A stretch of 64,000 nt of DNA from Phallusia mammillata (lineage: Eukaryota). Position numbers and translations under genes: made by a program. Below are positions 41,761 to 51,808 of the stretch, in pieces (within the stretch, counting starts at the first letter, position 1; every line of letters begins with the position of its first letter). The stretch spans positions 7,254,001 to 7,318,000 of the forward strand of contig OZ281500.1 of the NCBI GenBank assembly GCA_965637545.1. Direction: 5' to 3'. A model generated the notes under the pieces. The model was not told where the DNA came from. It was given only the letters and a program-made list of their open reading frames with translations, and searched no databases.

Positions 41761-42819
41761 ATGGCTGCGGCTAAGCAATTGAACAAAATTACACTCAAAG
41801 GATCTGCTGCAATTGTTTCTGAGTTTTTCTGTAAGTATTATATGCTTTTGGATTGCATAGCGTTTATCAATGAAATGTTGGGATTGGAATAAAATGTTGT
41901 TAAAAAACTCAATTAAAACTTTGTTTGACACAAACAGTTCACGGTTTAAAATGTCAAAGCATACACAGTGATGATTCTTGTACCATCGCAAACTTTTTAT
42001 TGAGGATTTTAACTTGTCTATATCATTCACAGTTTATGGAATAAACAATATCTTGTATCAGCGTGGAGTTTATCCACCAGAGATGTTCAAGCAAGAAAAG
42101 AAATATGGCCTTACGATCCTTGTCAGTACTGATGAAACTTTGTTGACCTACCTAAATGATAATGTTTTGCCCCAATTACAAGGTAACGTAATGTTGCTCT
42201 CTTCTGTGTTGCCTTTGTTTTGCCAACGCCAACAACTATTTCTGCAAATAGAATGGTTGGAAAAAGGTGCAGTAAAAAGGCTTGTTGTTGTCATACGAGA
42301 GTCTGAAACAAATGAAACTTTGGAAAGGTGGCAGTTTGAAATTCAGTGTGAATCTGACAAAAGTGAAAATGGAAAACCAGCAACAAAGTATGAAAATTTT
42401 CTTTTTATTACCACTTCTTCACAAACTTAAACTGTGCTTTGACATTGTGTTTATTTATTTATTGTTGCTGTTAAGTATGTATTATTATTGAATTTGCAGA
42501 TCGAAAGAAACCATCAACTCTGAAATCCGGGCAGTTATTCGTCAAGTCACAGCAACAGTTACATTTTTGCCACTCTTGGAATGTCCTTGTAAGTCGATAC
42601 TATGTCCAAACTAGTAGATGCAAACACATGCATCTAATACTGTCATTTTTAGGTTCTTTTGATTTACTTTTTTACACTGACAAAAACTTGGAAGTATCTG
42701 AAAAATGGGAAGACTCCAGTCCTTGCTTAATACCTAACTCAGAAGAAGTTAAACTGAGATCCTTCTCCACATCTGTTCATAAAGTGGATGGCGCAGTGTC
42801 ATACAAGTTTTCAATGTAA
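41761..42819 (+). CDS. MAD2L1: Spindle checkpoint protein MAD2 (HORMA domain)
   Basis: Exons 41761-41830, 42033-42182, 42252-42387, 42500-42588 and 42653-42819. Motifs ITLKGSAAIVSEFF, YGINNILYQRGVYP, KKYGLT, LERWQF, EIRAVIRQVTATVTFLPLL, FDLLFYTD and RSFSTSVHKV. Confidence 0.95.
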
Positions 42820-42976: not shown

Positions 42977-45832
42977 TCACGCAGACACACCATAGCAAAT
43001 ATCTATGTGCTGATAAAAACTACCAATTGTTAAAGCTGTAAGAATGGCAAGCACAGTGTGGTGTAAAGGTACAGGATCCATGTGCAGCATTGTGGAACAG
43101 CTTTGTGCAAAGTTTTCAGACACCATGTTTAGAAACACACCTGAGAGGCAGCATGCAAATATATGAGCAGGAAAATAGTGGTGGAAGAACAGCACCCGCT
43201 TCATGAAGAAAAAAGGCCCATAGTGAATAAGCCAGGCAATTGCAAAACACCCACATACACCTATATCAATGTTGTATGTTAAACGATATTTTCTAGTATC
43301 AAAAAACTGTATACTGTATCTACATGTAAGCGCATAGACAACAGGAAACAAACACAGACTGAAAACATTGGTCCACCATACCAATGGTGTTCCATACAAA
43401 TAAACTTTTTCTGAAGATCGAGAGAATAATTGACCCTGTATGTATAAAAAACAACGCTATTTAATAGTGTTTGCCAAAGTTGTAAATAGTATTTGCCAAA
43501 ATTGTAAAAATAGTATGTTTTTATTTACCTCATTAAGCACTGGCCACTGCCAAGGCTTGGACCATTTGACACCACGTTTGGCAACCAGTCTGGAATTCAT
43601 GGCAAACATGACGCCATGTGATTCCAAAAGCTTTTGCCAAAAAGACAGAACTGGTATTGGTTTTGTTGAAACAGTCTTATTAAAGTTAATTACACTTTCA
43701 ACAAACCACCAGTTGTGATATGCAAGTCGTTGTTTGACACAAGTAACCTACCAAAAGAGTGCATGATTAGCACCAAAACCAAAGGTTGCAGATTTTGCTT
43801 ATTACCTCTCTTTGTTTCCAACCCCAGTCAGGAAGAGTTTGGTCACTCAAGTGTAAGTAGCAATGAGTTGCCACATTAATTAACCGGATTGGACACTCAA
43901 TGGGACATAGAGTCTGGTTTTCTTACAAATGAAAAATACAGTAGTACCTTGCCAAGTTACAAACAACCAAATGAACATTACCCAACATTTGAATCTTCCA
44001 CTGATCACTACCTTGTGCAACAAAACGACTTGAATTTTGCACAGTTGTGACAAGCAAATGGTTTGTAGACAAAGGAGCTGATGCCCATCGGTTGATGTCA
44101 TTTAACACCACTGCAAGTCTGGACTTTGTTTTAAGATGAGTTAGTTGCACTACATCACCATGTTTGATAGAGTTGGCTATGGTGTTATTCTGGCAAATAC
44201 ACAATTTGTTTACCAGAGTACTGAATTAACATGTTAGCAGACAACTTACTTCATTGTTATTAACCTTCATTATGTTCCAAATGTTGTTGGAGTCTTTTGC
44301 AAGATAGCCAGTTACCTAGATTGTCACATATACAGCTGTAACTTTAAATGTCATACTAGTAACAATATATTTTAATAGACAAAAGGAATTTTAACCTGTT
44401 GCAAATGTTGAGTATGCACAGAATCTGGGAATGGTCGATTGTGTGAGTGTAGAATAACTCCACCATAGTCACTGCTACGTAGTGTTATAAAGTTTTTTGA
44501 GGTTACAACTTTTGGGACAGTGGTATTGTGAAAGGGATTTCCTGATAAAAAAAATCTGGTTGTAAGTGCAGCTAGATACCAAAACAACATACGTACTCAC
44601 CCAACAAACTTGCCTGAAAGGATGTACTATATAAATCCGCACCCTTTCCATTGTTTACAAGAACTTTAAAATGCAACCAAAAGACAAAAATGTACAGAGC
44701 AATTGGTAAACAAATGAGACCAAACACTTTGGCACAAATATACTTCAGCAAAACAGACCATGAAATACTCTGCCAAAGCATAGTAGAACAACTAGAATAA
44801 GGATAAACGATTGAAAACAAAATAATGACAAACCTCAAACCACACAATAAAAAGGTCCCATAGAGTCCAGGCACCAACATAAATAACAGTTAAAACTCCA
44901 ACAAACTTTGTTGAAAGTGCACATCCAAGTAAGAAACCTGTACTTAATAGACACATCCACCATTTTATACTGAATCTGTACTTTTCCATGTTTCCTTTAA
45001 AAAAAGAAATGACTGGTAACATACATGTATCTATGATAAACATGTATATTAGGAAAGCAAACAATGTTCACCTTGTTGGATGGTCAGTTTTGCATTTGCT
45101 GCAACTGCTCCCATCATGAAAAACAACATAATTGAATCAAGCAGTATGTACTGGGAAAGTGTAATTAACCCACAATCGAAAGCCTACAACACAGATCATA
45201 AATACACTTCAACTTATGAAATGCATATTCTTGGGATGTATACTTACCAAAAACATAGAAGCTATGTAAGCACTACATTTGTTTTCAGTTAATGTTAAAA
45301 CAAGTTGAAAGATCAATGGAATTAACAAAGAACCAAACAAGGCAGAAAACAATCTCATTTTTACATAAGGCACCGATTCCTGTGTTTGGTTAATATTAGA
45401 ATATTCACTGGCACTGGAAAAAGCAAATGTGCCATCGTAGCCAAAAAGGTGTGCTGAAAAACAAAACTAATGTTAACTATGTTGCTAAATTTCCACAATA
45501 TTTATAAAGTAGGCTAAAAAGTTTTACCTGATCCAGCAATCAAAAGCTTTCCCAAAGGTGGATGCACATCAAAGAAAAATGTTTGTTTAATATAAAGGCC
45601 TGCCATTTTACCAAAGTGTGTTTCATCCCAACAAACATATGGTGGTGTTTCAATCATGTAATATCTGAAAATATTAAAAAAAGGTAGATAAAACATACAG
45701 CATCTTTTTTACCAGCAATAAATGGTTAAAACTTAAGCATAGGTAAACTGATTTGCATTACCGTGTTATAAAGCTGATAAGAGTAACAGCACCACAGGAA
45801 ATAAAACAATCATGTTTAATAAAATTCAACAT
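42977..45832 (-). CDS. POMT2: Protein O-mannosyltransferase 2 (PMT and MIR domains)
   Basis: Multi-exon gene, including exons 45832-45762, 45664-45528, 45453-45248, 45183-45072 and a last exon from about 43437 to 42977. Motifs [39 protein letters not shown] repeats ([20 protein letters not shown]), SKPWQWP and [17 protein letters not shown] is POMT2-type rather than POMT1-type. The start codon is uncertain. Confidence 0.88.
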
Positions 45833-46251: not shown

Positions 46252-46929
46252 TCAAGACTTTGCGTTGTTAAAAAATCTGTGCAATTGTTTTGCAGCCGAC
46301 TCTCCAACTACATCAGTTAAACTTGCTTGTGATGCATTTACTATGTTCTCAATGTTTTTGAACTTCTCCAGTAAAAGCTTTGCTTTTGTTTCACCAATTC
46401 GCGGAAACTTCAAAACAACAGACAAAATAGCAGCATCTGTATAAGCAGGACCTTGGGTTTTACCAACAAATGGATTTCTGCTAGGAGTTTTCATTGCCGA
46501 CATAACCATTTGACACAGGTAACTTGCAGCTTCCTTGCACCCATCAACACCTAAAATATTCATGTTGCAATCCAACACAATAAACTTTTGAATGTCCCAA
46601 AATTGAAAATGAGTTACATCTGTCTTGTCCACTAACACACATCGCTTTTGAAACCCTCTTGCGTTACGAAGTTTAGCAATTCTTCTTCTGTATGCTGCAG
46701 ATGAAACAATGTCTTTTTCTGTTACATACATCACACATGAATGACACGTTGGATGAAAATCAGCAACACCAATTTCACCCATTACTGAAATTGTCACCTT
46801 TCCTTTAAGATGCGACACCAAATCTGTATCTTTCCATCGTGGATGCAAAAGTAATGTTCCTGGAGGCACAGACAAACCTCGTCGCACAGGTGTGCACTGG
46901 GTGGTCGCGTAAGATGTTGACTTGGACAT
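46252..46929 (-). CDS. FAAP24: Fanconi anaemia core complex-associated protein 24, intronless, 225 aa
   Basis: Single ORF aligning end to end with recalled FAAP24: VPPGTLLLHPRW, CVMYVTEKDIV..AYRRRIAKLRN, IQKFIVLD, RNPFVGK, and the HhH motif FPRIGETKAKLLLEKF. Confidence 0.9.
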   Translation of the reverse strand: MSKSTSYATTQCTPVRRGLSVPPGTLLLHPRWKDTDLVSHLKGKVTISVMGEIGVADFHPTCHSCVMYVTEKDIVSSAAYRRRIAKLRNARGFQKRCVLVDKTDVTHFQFWDIQKFIVLDCNMNILGVDGCKEAASYLCQMVMSAMKTPSRNPFVGKTQGPAYTDAAILSVVLKFPRIGETKAKLLLEKFKNIENIVNASQASLTDVVGESAAKQLHRFFNNAKS

Positions 46930-47740: not shown

Positions 47741-50700
47741 ATGGAACAACGTGAACAAGTAGGGCGCAAGGGGTCGTTTCCCAATGCAAGACACTGGAGT
47801 TGCAACACGTTATTTGTGGAAAGTGGAAGACCCAGTTTTGTCGGAAGAGGAAGTTTCGGACATGTAGTAAAGGCCTACAGAAAGCATTTTGGAACTGTAG
47901 CGGTCAAAATTACCAGCGCTACAAACATGCAAGAAATAGAAAAATTTAAAAGAGGTATCTACGTAGTTTTGATATGAATATTCCATCTGTAGGATATTTG
48001 GTTGCAACCTAGGCTATAGCCTCCCTACAAGTTTGACCAAGTTTTTATGGTGATTATATTGACTACCAACAACAACAACTGTAAACTGGGCCTACACGCT
48101 AAACGAACCCTACTTTAAGACATCATATCAGCTTAAGTGTTTGTAGTCAGATTAACACAATTGACACACAGTGGCGTAGGCAGCCAAACATTTTGGGAGG
48201 GGCCAAATGATTTGTTGTCTAATACAACTTTTTGCTAACGCCTTTTTGCTAATCGGCGTGCTTTTACCAAACACGTGACTTCCAAACTGTGGTTCGACTG
48301 GTCAGCCAAACGCTTCGTTGATTTATTCCATGTCTGCATAAATCAAAAAAGCATGGATTTCGCCTAACAACTTGGTGACAAAAGTCATTTTTGGTAATTA
48401 ATTTAATTCCTTTAATAGTTGAGAGACGAAACCACAATGATGAAGGACGAAAATACACTAAATTAAAGTTTATCAATTTACAACTTTGAAAATTTGGGAG
48501 GGGCCATGGCCCCTTTGGCCCCTCCCTGGCTACGCCACTGTTGACACACTATGGCCCCTGGCATTTGGCATTCATCCTTGTTTGTAAACCTATGCAGTTT
48601 TATTGGTTTTCGTGGGGCTACTCTAAAATACGCAATCTACGCAATCTACGCAATCTACGCAATCTACGCAATCTACGCAATCTACGCAATCTATACGCAA
48701 TCTACGCAATCTACGCAATCTACTAACAAAAACTAACTAAGATGTTGACGGTTAGGGCTATTAGGGTCAGGGTGAGGGTTTGTGATACAAATAACTTTAA
48801 AATTTAATTTCAGATGCCTTTCAGGTCTAATTTTCTCACAAGTGTTAACATGCGGTACCATACAGTGTTTAGTACCACTCTCAACACGTATGAGAATATT
48901 AAGTCCAAACTGGACATCCAAAACTAAATTATAGTGTTATTTTTATTATAAACCCTCACCCAGACCCTAAAAACCCTAACCAGGCTAACCGTCAACATTT
49001 TTAAAAGTTGCATACGTTTTATAAGTAGATTGCGTACAGATTGCGTATTTTAGAGTAGCCCGTTTTCGTGGACCTTTAACGTCCAATGTATACAGGCTGT
49101 CTTGCACATTTTAGCCGAAATTATTACACCATTGTTATGTGGTTATACTGTGTTAAACATTTTTAGATAATAATATTGTTAGTACCCTTAACAGTTTTTG
49201 TATGATCCATTTCTGCGAAATGATATTTTGTATGGGCTAATATTGGTATAGTTTTATAAAATTATTCAACAAAAGGCTTGTTTTGCATTCTTCAGAAGCA
49301 GATATGCATGTCAATGCACAAACTTGCAAACATATCATTAATATAATGGCTTGGATTGCTGATTACGACCTTGGAATAGTCGGATTTGTAATGGACTATG
49401 CAGAAAACGGAACAGTCCATGGATTGTTGCATACTTGGGACGGAGAAATACCACTGGAACTTAAAAAACGGTAAATATGTTAATTATTGTTGTTGGTGTT
49501 TCCCGTCGGTTTCTTGTTGTGTCTAAAGATTTGATGTTACAAACTTTTATATCTCAGTTAAAACGTAGGCTATATGACATTGTATTTTTAGGTTTGTGTT
49601 TGAATTCGCATCTGGTTTAGATTTTCTGCACAACGTAAATACAGATCAACGGATTCTCCATCTAGATTTAAAGGTAACTTTGATAACTTTGTCATGCCTC
49701 AATTTAAAACAACATCGTTTTTTACTTTTTTTAGCCTTTCAACCTTCTCCTTGATGTCGACCTGCACGTAAAAATTTGTGATTTTGGTGGCAGCGTTTTA
49801 AGCACCATTACCGCCGACTGGTCGCACGCAAGACAGTTGGAAGGGTCGGTTGCCACTATGGTTTATTGCTCCCCAGAGCGACTGCAAAGCCCAAATATGC
49901 ACCCTGACTCAAAAGTAGGTTATAAACAAATGTATTGTGTAGTAGACCGTGTTAAGCGCGTGAATAAACAGAATACTGAAAAAGACTATATATTTTTATC
50001 ACCTGTGCTTGAAAAAGTATGTCTGATTTCGTGTCATGCATTATCTTGCTATTCAGTATTTGACGTAAAACGTACAATTCTATACCACAAATTCAGGCAA
50101 GGTTCCAAAACATTGTTACTGCTTTACTTTATTATGTTGGTTCAGGTGGACGTATATAGTTTTGGGGTTTCGGTTTGGCAAATCTTGGCCCGTGAAAAGC
50201 CGCTTCAACGCGTTTTGACACAACAACTCCGTAGCTTTGTGGTCGACCAACGTGGCCGTCCTGAAATTTATCCCCGAATGCGAAACGAGGTAAGCTGGCT
50301 TTAACCGTCTGGTTTGCATAATAATTAAACCAATCGCTTTGTTTCTGTTAAGAGTGATGCTCTTTGCTCGTTGGTAGAGCAGTGTTGGGAGCACGAACCA
50401 CAAAGGCGGCCAAGTGCAAACGGAATTGTTACAATTTTAGAGTGCAACTGTCCAATTGATTATAAACAAGTTGCCCGTCAAGTAAGTGATTTATTTCTTT
50501 TGTGACCAACAGGAACAAACTTTATTTAAGACAACCAAAACAAATCTTTAGGTTTTGCGTTTATGACTTTCGCGGTCGTAATATTTGCTTATGACCTTAA
50601 ATACCTAACTAATATACCAGATACATCAACGATATTTCTGTCAATGCCTATATATATATATATATATTACAGGTGTCGAATATCATTCAAAGTTTAGAGA

Positions 50701-51808
50701 ATTCGCCCCCGCTGACAGAGGAAACTGCTCAAACCCCACTTCTTTCGATGTTTGGCACCAATCAAGGCCATCCGTACTACTTTCCACCAAATGAAGGGCA
50801 ATTTCAACCACCACCTATTGTATATCAGCCTCCTGTCCGAACACACACACAAGGTGGGTAAATGCATCTTAATCGTATTAACTTTACTTAATATCAGTTT
50901 CAATATAAGGAGAATCTCCAGCAGCACAAAATCGAAATTCGACTGCACGTAGCAGGGCGAGGATGACATCTACAAATTCAAGTACGACCAGAAATTCACC
51001 CGTTCTTCCCTGTAACAATGCGCCCACACAAAGCGATACATTTTCGGGCGACGAAGAGCCAGGACCATCAAATAGACAACCAAACAGGCTTCGAAATATC
51101 TTGCGGACCGGAAAAGGATTATTGCACACAGCAAAGAATACACTGCCGCCACCGGCGGCAAAACTCTTCCACTCAAGCTTTTTGAACAATTATCCACTGA
51201 ATCCTAGTAAGCTTTTTATTCTTGCGTGTAGAAGTTCAAAATTGGCTATGCTTTAAGTGGTTGCAGCCTATTGGTTATAAGCAGATGATTTTTTAGGTAT
51301 TGCACATTCGACTACAAAAAGAATAGTCATAATTGGAGATTCGGGTAAATCTGATGTTATTACTGTCCTTAACACTCTGGATAAGGTAAACCAGTGCTTA
51401 AACGCGTTACATTTCAATAGTGTTCACCCGATTATCAAACCATTTGTTATTCAGAACAGGCAGGTTGTGTACAACGTTGAAAAAGGTGCTAAAGCTTTGC
51501 GCGATGGTTGCAACCTTATCATCTTGAGTTTTTCACAAGATCAACCTGAAGACTTCAAGAAGTTGGAGACAAAATGGATGAAACGAGTGAACAGCTCAAA
51601 ATCAAGCAAATCACCCAAACTACTGATTATGCTTGTAAAGCAAATCGCTGGACGTCGGACCGGTACGCGATCCTTGCACAACAAGAGCGAGTTGGAACAG
51701 CTTGGTCGAAAAATAACGGCCCACTGTTTCGTCCTGCGTGAAAATCAACAAGACGACCAGGACAGTCTGTTAACACTTGTAAGAGAATTGACGCAAAATC
51801 GACGTTAA
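47741..51808 (+). CDS. RIPK-like (TKL group) Ser/Thr kinase with an atypical C-terminal domain, about 610 aa
   Basis: Exons 47741-47954, 49296-49470, 49592-49673, 49735-49914, 50146-50289, 50353-50481, 50673-50853, 50922-51206, 51297-51385 and 51455-51808 total 1833 nt in frame. Motifs VGRGSFGHV, VAVK, GFVMDYAENG, ILHLDLKPFNLLLD (HLD as in RIPK4/ANKK1), KICDFG, DVYSFG and QCWEHEPQRRPS. Confidence 0.85.
48169..48540. mobile_element. Non-autonomous hAT-type MITE in kinase intron 1
   Basis: TIRs CAGTGGCGTAG / CTACGCCACTG. TSD TTGACACA at 48161-48168 and 48541-48548. Same TIR class as the element at 4120-4734. Confidence 0.9.
48615..49061. mobile_element. Foldback/Mutator-like element with 9-bp TSD in kinase intron 1
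   Basis: TIRs GGGCTACTCTAAAATACGCAATCT / AGATTGCGTATTTTAGAGTAGCCC. TSD GTTTTCGTG at 48606-48614 and 49062-49070. About 10 tandem TACGCAATC units in the left arm. Inner inverted block ATGTTGACGGTTAG / CTAACCGTCAACAT with TTAGGG-like units. Confidence 0.88.

What the first reader, a model, noticed from the sequence alone, without database searches (positions are those of the whole stretch)
51297..51808. RIPK-type kinase fused to a degenerate Rho-like pseudo-GTPase domain
Seen in sequence: the last two exons of the kinase encode TKRIVIIGDSGKSDVITVL...NRQVVYNV...ALRDGCNLIILSFSQDQPEDFKKLETKWMKRV...KLLIMLVKQ...ELEQLGRKITAHCF...LLTLVREL. My by-eye alignment to Rho-family GTPases ([65 protein letters not shown]) is collinear across the fold. 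The P-loop is two residues short (GDSG--KS), the switch I/beta2 region looks deleted, and there is no DxxG (G3) or NKxD (G4), so it would be a nucleotide-free pseudo-GTPase. Established knowledge: RIP kinases normally end in a death, CARD, RHIM or ankyrin module; LRRK/Roco proteins put Roc-COR before the kinase; DAPK1 has a full Roc-COR. A kinase followed by a Pro/Ser-rich linker and a Rho-like pseudo-GTPase is an architecture I do not recognise. Inference: it may be a lineage-specific signalling or innate-immune scaffold.
Basis: partly seen in the sequence, partly recalled or inferred. Interest (0 to 1): 0.75.

Follow-up and report, generated by a model that had tools for sequence, protein, structure and literature searches.

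The report
Sea-squirt RIPK-like kinase with GTPase-like tail
A sea-squirt gene joins an intact immune-type (RIPK-like) protein kinase, through a floppy linker, to a small orphan end domain that most likely descends from a Ras-type GTPase switch but has lost every nucleotide-binding motif; the pairing is undescribed, and the fold could not be confirmed here.

Summary
Ten exons with GT-AG introns (47741-51808, + strand) give one 614-codon frame: an apparently active non-RD TKL kinase closest to RIPK4/2/1/3, a linker of about 160 aa, and a tail of about 146 aa.

The tail has no Pfam, NCBIfam or PDB sequence match. It has no real relative among 1.84 billion representative proteins.

A Ras-superfamily profile built here from giant-virus Rab, Rho and Ras genes matches it modestly but consistently:
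- 14.4 bits, above all 500 shuffles and about 1,000 real non-GTPase proteins; it is the top of 1,644 six-frame segments of the window.
- hhalign P is 5e-5 to 1e-4, probability 53-66%.
- The two tail exons match beta1/P-loop and beta4-alpha3-beta5 separately and in the right order.

[quoted passage not shown] "Rho-like" is not supported: there is no Rho insert and no CAAX, and the P-loop looks Rab-type.

AlphaFold without relatives failed (pLDDT 38 and 50), so the fold test remains open. There are no RNA data.

The scan already noted on other DNA of this genome (Phallusia mammillata, per those notes) a large ascidian RIPK-like family with swapped partner domains, one a degenerate Rab-like fold. 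This gene is one more variant.

The parts
47741..47954 (+). Exon 1: start codon, glycine-rich loop and the VAVK lysine of the kinase N-lobe
   Evidence: In-frame TAA lies two codons upstream of the ATG. Pkinase / PK_Tyr_Ser-Thr piece, profile positions 6-49. Donor GT at 47955.
49296..49470 (+). Exon 2: alphaC glutamate (split codon G|AA), beta4-beta5 and hinge
   Evidence: Reading. Acceptor AG at 49294-95, donor GT at 49471.
49592..49673 (+). Exon 3: alphaE and the catalytic loop start H-L-D-L-K (non-RD)
   Evidence: Direct reading; frame fixed by phases.
49735..49914 (+). Exon 4: rest of the catalytic loop (P-F-N-L-L), DFG, activation segment, S-P-E
   Evidence: Pkinase E 1.1e-5. Best PDB sequence hit is RIPK4, then RAF and RIPK2.
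50146..50289 (+). Exon 5: alphaF-alphaG of the kinase C-lobe
   Evidence: PK_Tyr_Ser-Thr piece. PDB hits RIPK2, RIPK3, RIPK1.
50353..50481 (+). Exon 6: alphaH-alphaI, end of the kinase domain
   Evidence: PK_Tyr_Ser-Thr profile positions 231-257 of 258.
50673..51206 (+). Exons 7 and 8 (50673-50853 and 50910-51206; intron 50854-50909): linker of about 160 aa rich in Pro/Ser/Thr/Asn/Gln, probably disordered
   Evidence: No Pfam family; composition read. No RHIM-type I/V-Q-I/V-G core seen.
51297..51385 (+). Exon 9: beta1, shortened P-loop remnant (G-D-S-G-K-S) and start of alpha1 of the tail
   Evidence: Aligns to profile positions 5-24 of the Ras-superfamily HMM with a 2-residue gap in the P-loop. 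Scores 4.1-4.4 bits; 0-2 of 500 shuffles reach it.
51386..51454 (+). Intron 9: 69 nt, GT-AG, in frame and stop-free; probably spliced, retention possible
   Evidence: Codon-usage score -4.3, typical of stop-free non-coding windows (mean -3.6) and below all exon windows. Intron 4 of the same gene is also 3n and stop-free.
51455..51808 (+). Exon 10: rest of the tail (one strand, then beta4-alpha3-beta5-alpha4-beta6-alpha5 by alignment) and the stop codon
   Evidence: HMM 14.0 bits, per-comparison E 1.9e-6. hhalign P 8e-5. Part of the top-scoring segment among 1,644 six-frame segments.

Best explanation
One gene (47741-51808, + strand, 10 exons, 614 codons) encodes three parts.

1. A catalytically competent-looking, non-RD, RIPK-like TKL kinase.
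2. A disordered linker of about 160 aa.
3. A C-terminal alpha/beta domain of about 146 aa. It is most likely a very diverged remnant of a Ras-superfamily G domain, that is, a class-i pseudoGTPase that binds no nucleotide.

Shown: the open spliced frame, the kinase motifs, the orphan status of the tail, its modest but specific and collinear similarity to the Rab/Rho/Ras profile, and the loss of all five G motifs.

Inferred: the domain keeps the G-domain-like fold (or, with beta2 lost, a five-strand flavodoxin-like version of it). It works as a nucleotide-independent docking or dimerisation module that brings the kinase to partners. This would resemble p190RhoGAP pG1/pG2, CENP-M and AAGAB, which use dead G domains as interaction surfaces.

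Scan notes report that this genome holds a large sea-squirt family of RIPK-like kinases with exchanged partner domains. In that setting the tail is probably this member's recruitment or sensor module in a stress, cell-death or innate-immune type pathway.
For: Gene model: all nine introns are GT-AG and the phases give a single 1845-nt frame. Exon 9 has no start codon. Retaining intron 8 would stop translation after 17 codons.

Kinase:
- Pfam kinase pieces lie in order on five exons.
- RIPK4, RIPK2, RIPK1 and RIPK3 lead the PDB hits for two exons.
- VAVK, the alphaC Glu, H-L-D-L-K-P-x-N, DFG and S-P-E are all present (reading).

Tail against a Ras-superfamily HMM built from 110 giant-virus GTPases (four sampled members confirmed as Pfam Ras):
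- 14.4 bits against shuffles of mean 0.1, sd 1.8, max 9.5.
- Per-comparison E is 1.4e-6 for the 169-aa frame, 1.9e-6 for exon 10 and 0.002 for exon 9.
- It is the best of 1,644 six-frame segments of the window: 11.6 bits against the Rab-only profile, next best 7.0.
- It scores above all of about 1,000 real non-GTPase ORFs, whose maximum is 11.1.
- hhalign P is 5.5e-5 to 1.8e-4, probability 49-66%.
- A global hhalign is collinear over 152 columns.

Sequence pattern: five runs of 5-6 aliphatic residues, most about 35 residues apart, alternate with amphipathic stretches. That pattern fits a parallel alpha/beta fold (reading).

Precedent: pseudoGTPases are defined as G folds lacking G motifs, and class i binds no nucleotide (PMC5593906).
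Against: - Pfam's curated Ras, Roc and Arf models give no hit at E up to 10. There is no PDB sequence hit at E up to 10.
- Corrected for about 25,000 families, the exon-10 match alone is borderline (E about 0.05-3).
- The confident local alignment covers only about 40 residues (beta4-alpha3-beta5) plus a weak P-loop match.
- AlphaFold gave no usable model: pLDDT 37.6 for the 169-aa frame, and 50.4 and all-helical for exon 10 alone.
- No relatives exist to test conservation or covariation.
- There is no transcript evidence for the exon 8-9-10 joins.
- The function is entirely inferred.
Confidence: 0.55

Rival explanations
1. The tail is a lineage-specific (beta-alpha)5 flavodoxin/CheY/TIR-like or otherwise new alpha/beta domain with no GTPase ancestry. 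On this reading the P-loop-like G-D-S-G-K-S and the beta4-alpha3 resemblance are convergent features of doubly wound folds.
For: With intron 9 removed, only about 25 residues lie between alpha1 and the strand aligned to beta4. The domain then has five strands and five helices, not the six-strand G domain (reading). No curated GTPase model reaches any threshold. All G motifs are absent. PMC5593906 itself notes that CheY-type receivers share the small-GTPase-like fold without G motifs.
Against: Two separate exons each match the same family at the correct, collinear profile positions. About 1,000 real non-GTPase proteins, which should include other alpha/beta folds, all score below the tail against this profile. 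Pfam TIR, receiver and flavodoxin models also give no hit. I ran no dedicated profile comparison against those families.
Confidence: 0.25
2. The 69 nt at 51386-51454 are not removed, or not always, so the tail is 169 aa. The extra 23 residues supply the missing switch I/beta2 region and give a full-length six-strand G-domain remnant.
For: The segment is a multiple of three, in frame and stop-free. The 169-aa frame has the length of a canonical G domain. In the global hhalign the extra residues fall where switch I and beta2 lie, with H-P-I-I opposite the S/P-T-I/V motif. The low-confidence AlphaFold model puts a short hairpin there.
Against: The donor, acceptor and pyrimidine tract are good, and the size matches the 56-69 nt introns of this gene. 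The codon-usage score of -4.3 equals that of stop-free non-coding windows and is below every exon window. Intron 4 (231 nt) is also 3n and stop-free, so this happens by chance in this gene. The local HMM and hhalign alignments do not use the segment.
Confidence: 0.2
3. Exons 9-10 are not part of the kinase protein. They would be a separate or decaying gene fragment, or an alternative 3' end that is rarely used, and the kinase normally ends after exon 8.
For: There is no transcript evidence. No database protein carries this tail. Retaining intron 8 gives a stop 17 codons later, which would make a kinase-plus-linker protein.
Against: A 176-codon open frame in AT-rich DNA is very unlikely without selection. 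The frame has no ATG, GTG or TTG before 51467, so the tail cannot start on its own. Splice phases fit exactly. Only 90 nt separate exons 8 and 9.
Confidence: 0.1

Closest known systems
Class-i pseudoGTPase domains (p190RhoGAP pG1/pG2, CENP-M, AAGAB N-terminal domain)
   Same: A small-GTPase-like domain embedded in or attached to a signalling protein, with all five G motifs degraded. It is expected to bind no nucleotide and to act as an interaction surface (PMC5593906, PMC12490416).
   Different: There is no detectable sequence relationship to any of them, since nothing matched in the PDB sequence searches. Here the partner is a protein kinase. The fold is not demonstrated. The P-loop is shortened rather than occluded.
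Roco proteins / LRRK1 and LRRK2 (RIPK6, RIPK7) and DAPK1
   Same: A Ras-like G domain and a TKL/RIP-type or related kinase on one polypeptide. They are linked to innate-immune cells in the literature (PMC9573974).
   Different: In LRRK the order is LRR-Roc-COR-kinase, and Roc binds GTP. Here the G-like domain follows the kinase after a disordered linker. There is no COR, and there are no LRR, ankyrin or WD40 repeats (no Pfam hits). The G motifs are dead.
RIPK1-4 (death domain, CARD, RHIM or ankyrin tails) and the amphioxus RIP-kinase domain combinations
   Same: The kinase pieces are closest to RIPK4, RIPK2, RIPK1 and RIPK3. The catalytic loop is non-RD. The layout is a kinase at the N-terminus followed by an intermediate region and a C-terminal interaction module. 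Amphioxus also shows many lineage-specific RIP-kinase domain combinations (PMC9573974).
   Different: The tail shows no death, CARD or ankyrin family, and the linker shows no RHIM core (reading). The tail is an orphan alpha/beta domain.
Other RIPK-like kinase fusions noted by this scan in the same genome (TPR, Kelch, ZU5-UPA, atlastin/GBP-like GTPase, degenerate Rab-like fold)
   Same: A RIPK-like kinase plus a linker plus an exchangeable partner domain. One member is reported with a switch-dead Rab-type fold.
   Different: The exon-10 search of 1.84 billion representative proteins returned nothing real, so no close relative of this tail was found there. This gene is a singleton between housekeeping genes, not in a tandem cluster.

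Membership tests
Ras-superfamily small GTPase (Pfam Ras PF00071) | G1 / Walker A: G-x-x-x-x-G-K-[ST] | tested here: not met
   The tail has G-D-S-G-K-S, two residues short. The HMM alignment places a 2-residue gap inside the P-loop.
Ras-superfamily small GTPase (Pfam Ras PF00071) | G2 Thr of switch I, G3 D-x-x-G, G4 [NT]-K-x-D, G5 S-A-[KL] | tested here: not met
   In the global hhalign the aligned positions read as follows. G2: no Thr (region absent if spliced, P-I-I if the intron is retained). G3: N-V-E..K-G. G4: V-K-Q-I. G5: C-F-V-L.
Ras-superfamily small GTPase (Pfam Ras PF00071) | Score above the curated family threshold | tested here: not met
   No Ras, Roc or Arf hit at E up to 1 (per exon) or up to 10 (169-aa frame). 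The custom profile gives 14.4 bits, whereas true members score 50 or more.
Ras-superfamily small GTPase (Pfam Ras PF00071) | G-domain fold (six-strand sheet, five helices) | tested here: inconclusive
   AlphaFold without relatives gave pLDDT 37.6 and 50.4. The models are too poor for a fold search.
Rho family | Rho insert helix between beta5 and alpha4; C-terminal CAAX box | tested here: not met
   There is a 7-residue gap in the query at the insert position against the Rho profile. The protein ends ...T-Q-N-R-R with no Cys.
PseudoGTPase, class i (PMC5593906) | [quoted passage not shown] | tested here: inconclusive
   G motifs are degraded: met. The GTPase fold is supported only by profile similarity, not by structure.
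PseudoGTPase, class i (PMC5593906) | No nucleotide binding | not testable with these tools
   Needs MANT-GTPgammaS, thermal-shift or ITC assays on the purified domain.
RIP kinase family / TKL group | Complete protein kinase domain with catalytic residues, closest to RIPKs | tested here: met
   Pfam kinase pieces lie in order across exons. RIPK4, RIPK2, RIPK1 and RIPK3 are top among PDB hits for two exons, with RAF close behind; each E value is weak, 0.0015-0.01. The catalytic residues were read directly. No phylogeny was made.
RIP kinase family / TKL group | Death domain, CARD, RHIM or ankyrin repeats after the kinase | tested here: not met
   No such Pfam family on exons 7-10. No I/V-Q-I/V-G core in the linker (reading).
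Roco (LRRK, DAPK1, MFHAS1) | Roc domain immediately followed by COR; in LRRK, Roc-COR precedes the kinase | tested here: not met
   The protein stops at the end of the G-like domain, so there is no room for COR. The order is kinase first. No Roc or COR Pfam hit.

The most novel reading that the evidence does not exclude
The dead GTPase-like tail is an integrated decoy. On this reading, a mimic of host Rab/Rho GTPases is tethered to a RIPK-like kinase, so that microbial toxins or effectors that bind or modify small GTPases dock on the mimic and switch on kinase signalling. That would be an animal counterpart of plant NLR integrated decoys and of pyrin's guarding of Rho. It would fit a sea-squirt kinase family whose partner domains are exchanged between members.
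Probability: 0.06. Interest if true: 0.85.

Novelty: new variant of a known kind. Interest (0 to 1): 0.45.

Why it matters
If the tail is a pseudoGTPase, this would be a kinase-then-dead-G-domain layout that I found neither in the papers searched nor in 1.84 billion representative proteins.

It would add a member to the small set of nucleotide-free pseudoGTPases. It would also add a new partner module to an apparently large, uncharacterised sea-squirt expansion of RIPK-like kinases. That family could show how invertebrate chordates diversify cell-death and innate-immune signalling by domain swapping.

The practical value is moderate. The fold and the splicing are unproven, the domain has no known relatives, and the scan has already flagged similar fusions elsewhere in this genome.

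Tried and rejected
- Sequence searches of the tail found nothing. This covers Pfam and NCBIfam, PDB sequences, the word-index protein search with exon 10 and a metagenome scan.
- The all-against-all HMMER search returned two hits, P0001 and P0002. Both are translations of one repetitive element that match through an I-A-x-R-R-T-G stretch, so I rejected them as spurious.
- AlphaFold on the 169-aa open frame and on exon 10 alone gave unusable models. I therefore ran no fold search, which would have been meaningless.
- I considered folding the tail with the Ras-superfamily alignment as its MSA. I rejected this as circular, because the model would follow the alignment.
- I considered the 69-nt intron as coding sequence. 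Composition argues against it, so it is kept only as a minority rival.
- A Ras-only profile of two sequences gave no signal.
- No paralogue of any exon exists elsewhere in the window.
- A spliced (joined) protein was never built for, or sent to, any search or fold. All searches were exon by exon, or on the naturally stop-free frame window:51299-51805:+, always by reference.
- In one search a script concatenated the exon DNA only to count codons and follow the reading frame across the introns. Nothing joined was printed, searched or saved.
- A full-length search for the same architecture was impossible, because no stop-free reference is long enough for the length window of the word search.
Full report
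OBSERVATION. The window around 47.7-51.8 kb carries a multi-exon gene on the + strand. Exon 9 is 51297-51385 and exon 10 is 51455-51808 with the stop. Both proposed junctions have canonical GT...AG signals, pyrimidine tracts and fitting phases. The frame 51281-51808 is open for 176 codons in DNA of 36-39% GC. Only 18 ORFs of 110 aa or more occur in the whole window, so this is coding sequence.

GENE MODEL. Reading the boundaries gives ten exons:
- 47741-47954
- 49296-49470
- 49592-49673
- 49735-49914
- 50146-50289
- 50353-50481
- 50673-50853
- 50910-51206
- 51297-51385
- 51455-51808

All nine introns are GT-AG. Six of them are 56-121 nt long. The total is 1845 nt, 614 codons plus a stop. The ATG at 47741 has an in-frame stop two codons upstream. 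It lies about 810 bp from the start of a divergently oriented FAAP24-like gene (FANCM pseudonuclease domain plus HhH), so no N-terminal domain is missing.

Exon 9 has no start codon, and its frame holds no ATG, GTG or TTG before 51467. Retaining intron 8 would end the protein 17 codons later. The simplest reading is therefore one protein: kinase, linker, tail. No transcript evidence was available.

I did not build a joined protein for any search or fold. Everything was done exon by exon, or on a naturally stop-free frame, by reference. One script concatenated the exon DNA only to count codons and follow the frame.

KINASE. Five exons carry consecutive pieces of Pfam Pkinase / PK_Tyr_Ser-Thr, from profile positions 6-49 up to 231-257 of 258. 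PDB sequence searches of single exons put RIPK4 first for exon 4, with RAF and RIPK2 next. For exon 5 they list RIPK2, RIPK3 and RIPK1 after a single EGFR chain that ranks first. Exon 1 matches only the generic glycine-loop region. The E values are weak because the pieces are short. The kinase is a TKL-group, RIPK-like kinase, but no tree was made.

The glycine loop, the VAVK lysine, the alphaC Glu (a split codon), H-L-D-L-K-P-x-N, DFG and S-P-E are all present. The kinase therefore looks active and is of the non-RD type, as RIPK1, RIPK2 and RIPK4 are (from my own knowledge). Exons 7-8 encode about 160 residues rich in Pro, Ser, Thr, Asn and Gln. They have no family hit and no RHIM core.

THE TAIL IS AN ORPHAN. 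The following searches found nothing:
- Pfam or NCBIfam at E up to 1 or 10.
- PDB sequences at E up to 10.
- The word-index search, for proteins of 64-205 aa.
- Metagenome contigs.

HMMER over 1.84 billion representative proteins returned two hits. Both are translations of one repeat that match through a short Arg/Thr/Gly stretch, so there are no real relatives.

The query did not find itself either, so this genome's own proteins with this exon are not in that library. The absence of relatives is therefore partly a matter of database coverage.

TEST OF THE GTPase RESEMBLANCE. I needed tool-derived reference sequences. I scanned viral contigs for DNA patterns encoding W-D-T-A-G-Q-E-R, W-D-T-A-G-Q-E-D-Y and D-T-A-G-Q-E-E-Y. 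From giant-virus contigs I extracted 110 Rab-like ORFs (101 distinct), 7 Rho/Rac-like ORFs and 2 Ras-like ORFs. Four sampled members are clear Pfam Ras members. Results against the resulting profiles:
- The combined HMM gives 14.4 bits for the 169-aa frame and 14.0 for exon 10 alone. For the 169-aa frame, 500 shuffles have mean 0.1, sd 1.8 and max 9.5. Per-comparison E is 1.4e-6 and 1.9e-6.
- Exon 9 alone gives 4.1-4.4 bits, which 0-2 of 500 shuffles reach. It aligns to beta1/P-loop with a two-residue gap inside the P-loop.
- Exon 10 aligns to profile positions 78-118, which are beta4-alpha3-beta5.
- Among 1,644 stop-to-stop segments of the window in six frames, the tail is the top hit. It scores 11.6 bits against the Rab-only profile, and the next best is 7.0.
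- Among about 1,000 real non-GTPase ORFs of 120 aa or more from the viral loci, none exceeds 11.1 bits. All true GTPases score 50 or more.
- hhalign gives P of 5.5e-5 to 1.8e-4 and probability 49-66%.
- With the Rho profile the alignment extends collinearly through alpha4 and beta6.
- A forced global alignment is collinear over 152 columns.

HOW STRONG THIS IS. The match is specific and collinear, and two independent exons contribute to it. It is still weak in absolute terms. It scores 14 bits against 50 or more for members. Pfam's own Ras model does not report it. Multiplied by about 25,000 families, the exon-10 match alone would have an E of roughly 0.05 to 3. I put the odds that the tail descends from a Ras-superfamily G domain at roughly 55-65%.

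MOTIFS AND SUBFAMILY.
- G1 reads G-D-S-G-K-S, which is the Rab-type G-D-S-G-V-G-K-S minus two residues.
- There is no switch I Thr and no D-x-x-G.
- G4 is V-K-Q-I, and G5 is absent.
- There is no CAAX or CC end.
- Against the Rho profile the query lacks 7 residues where the Rho insert lies. Its beta5-alpha4 spacing fits Rab/Ras.
- The Rab profile scores at least as well as the Rho profile: 11.8 against 9.7 bits.

"Rho-like" is therefore not supported. "Ras-superfamily-like, all G motifs dead" is the defensible wording. Under the definition in PMC5593906, this would be a class-i pseudoGTPase if the fold holds.

STRUCTURE. AlphaFold2 without relatives gave mean pLDDT 37.6 for the 169-aa frame. 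For exon 10 alone it gave 50.4 and an all-helical guess. Neither model is usable, so no fold search was run. It neither supports nor refutes the claim.

THE LAST INTRON. The 69 nt at 51386-51454 are in frame and stop-free. If retained they would add 23 residues exactly where switch I and beta2 belong, and the domain would reach canonical G-domain length. Three points argue that they are spliced out:
- The splice signals and the size match the other short introns of this gene.
- The in-frame codon-usage score (-4.3) is that of stop-free non-coding windows (mean -3.6) and lies below every exon window.
- Intron 4 (231 nt) is likewise 3n and stop-free.

I take the segment to be an intron, about 75-80% likely. 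The spliced tail then has five strands and five helices. That is a G domain without beta2, which has the same strand order as a flavodoxin/CheY-like fold. This keeps the non-GTPase alpha/beta rival alive.

CONTEXT. The neighbours are housekeeping genes: a POMT-like gene, a HORMA/MAD2L2-like gene and FAAP24-like upstream. Scan notes place CDC27 and Pol eta downstream. No paralogue lies in the window.

Scan notes, which I did not check, identify the genome as the sea squirt Phallusia mammillata. They describe a large ascidian-only RIPK-like kinase expansion with exchanged partner domains: TPR, Kelch, ZU5-UPA, an atlastin/GBP-like GTPase, and a degenerate Rab-like fold joined to the kinase. This gene looks like one more variant of that family, and the scan had found the general theme before on other DNA.

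In the literature searched I found no description of a kinase followed by a dead G domain, nor of ascidian RIP-like kinases. PMC9573974 does not mention tunicates. It documents LRRK1/2 as RIPK6/7 with Roc-COR before the kinase, and many lineage-specific RIP-kinase domain combinations in amphioxus.

MECHANISM. Most likely (0.55) the protein is an active RIPK-like kinase whose C-terminal dead G-like domain, held on a flexible linker, serves as a nucleotide-independent docking or dimerisation module. That module would set where and with whom the kinase signals.

Shown: the frame, the motifs, the orphan status and the profile similarity. Inferred: the fold, the lack of nucleotide binding, the docking role and any immune function.

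Rivals:
- An unrelated alpha/beta domain (0.25).
- Retention of the 69 nt, giving a full-length G-like domain (0.2; this does not exclude the main reading).
- Exons 9-10 not belonging to the kinase mRNA (0.1).

VERDICT. It is a new variant of known kinds (RIP-type kinases with swapped modules; pseudoGTPase domains). Interest is moderate, and the decisive tests (RNA reads, orthologues, a confident structure) are still to be done.

Noticed in passing
window 48615-49061 (inside intron 1 of the kinase gene): A foldback element with perfect 24-nt terminal inverted repeats (48615-48638 / 49038-49061) and nested 67-nt arms at 82% complementarity. One arm holds about 10 tandem copies of a 9-nt unit (ACGCAATCT). 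It looks like a MITE-like insertion with a microsatellite.
   Followed up: partly
window 49915-50145 (intron 4) and 51386-51454 (intron 9): Two of the nine introns are multiples of three and stop-free in the reading frame. Retaining either would keep the protein in frame. Intron 4 read-through is what creates the 155-aa ORF listed at 49837-50304.
   Followed up: partly
window 46252-46929 (- strand): A single-exon, 225-aa FAAP24-like gene (FANCM pseudonuclease domain E 5.7e-32, plus HhH motifs). It lies head to head with the kinase gene, about 810 bp from its ATG, so the two probably share a bidirectional promoter region.
   Followed up: partly
window 41978-42430 (+) and 42980-43399 (-): A HORMA-domain exon (MAD2L2-like, E 7e-12) and, on the other strand, an exon of a protein O-mannosyltransferase (PMT_4TMC, E 2e-25). 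These are housekeeping neighbours, so the kinase gene is not in an immune-gene cluster.
   Followed up: partly
library proteins P0001 (763 aa) and P0002 (4536 aa): Both are translations of one tandemly repeated DNA element in the public protein library. They produce spurious HMMER hits at E about 1e-6 to any query carrying an I-A-x-R-R-T-G-like stretch, which is a trap for orphan-domain searches.
   Followed up: yes
loci L001-L130 (IMG/VR giant-virus contigs): More than 100 distinct Rab-like GTPase genes, plus several Rac/Rho-like and Ras-like genes, are encoded on giant-virus metagenome contigs. One contig, L025, carries two adjacent Rab-like genes.
   Followed up: no
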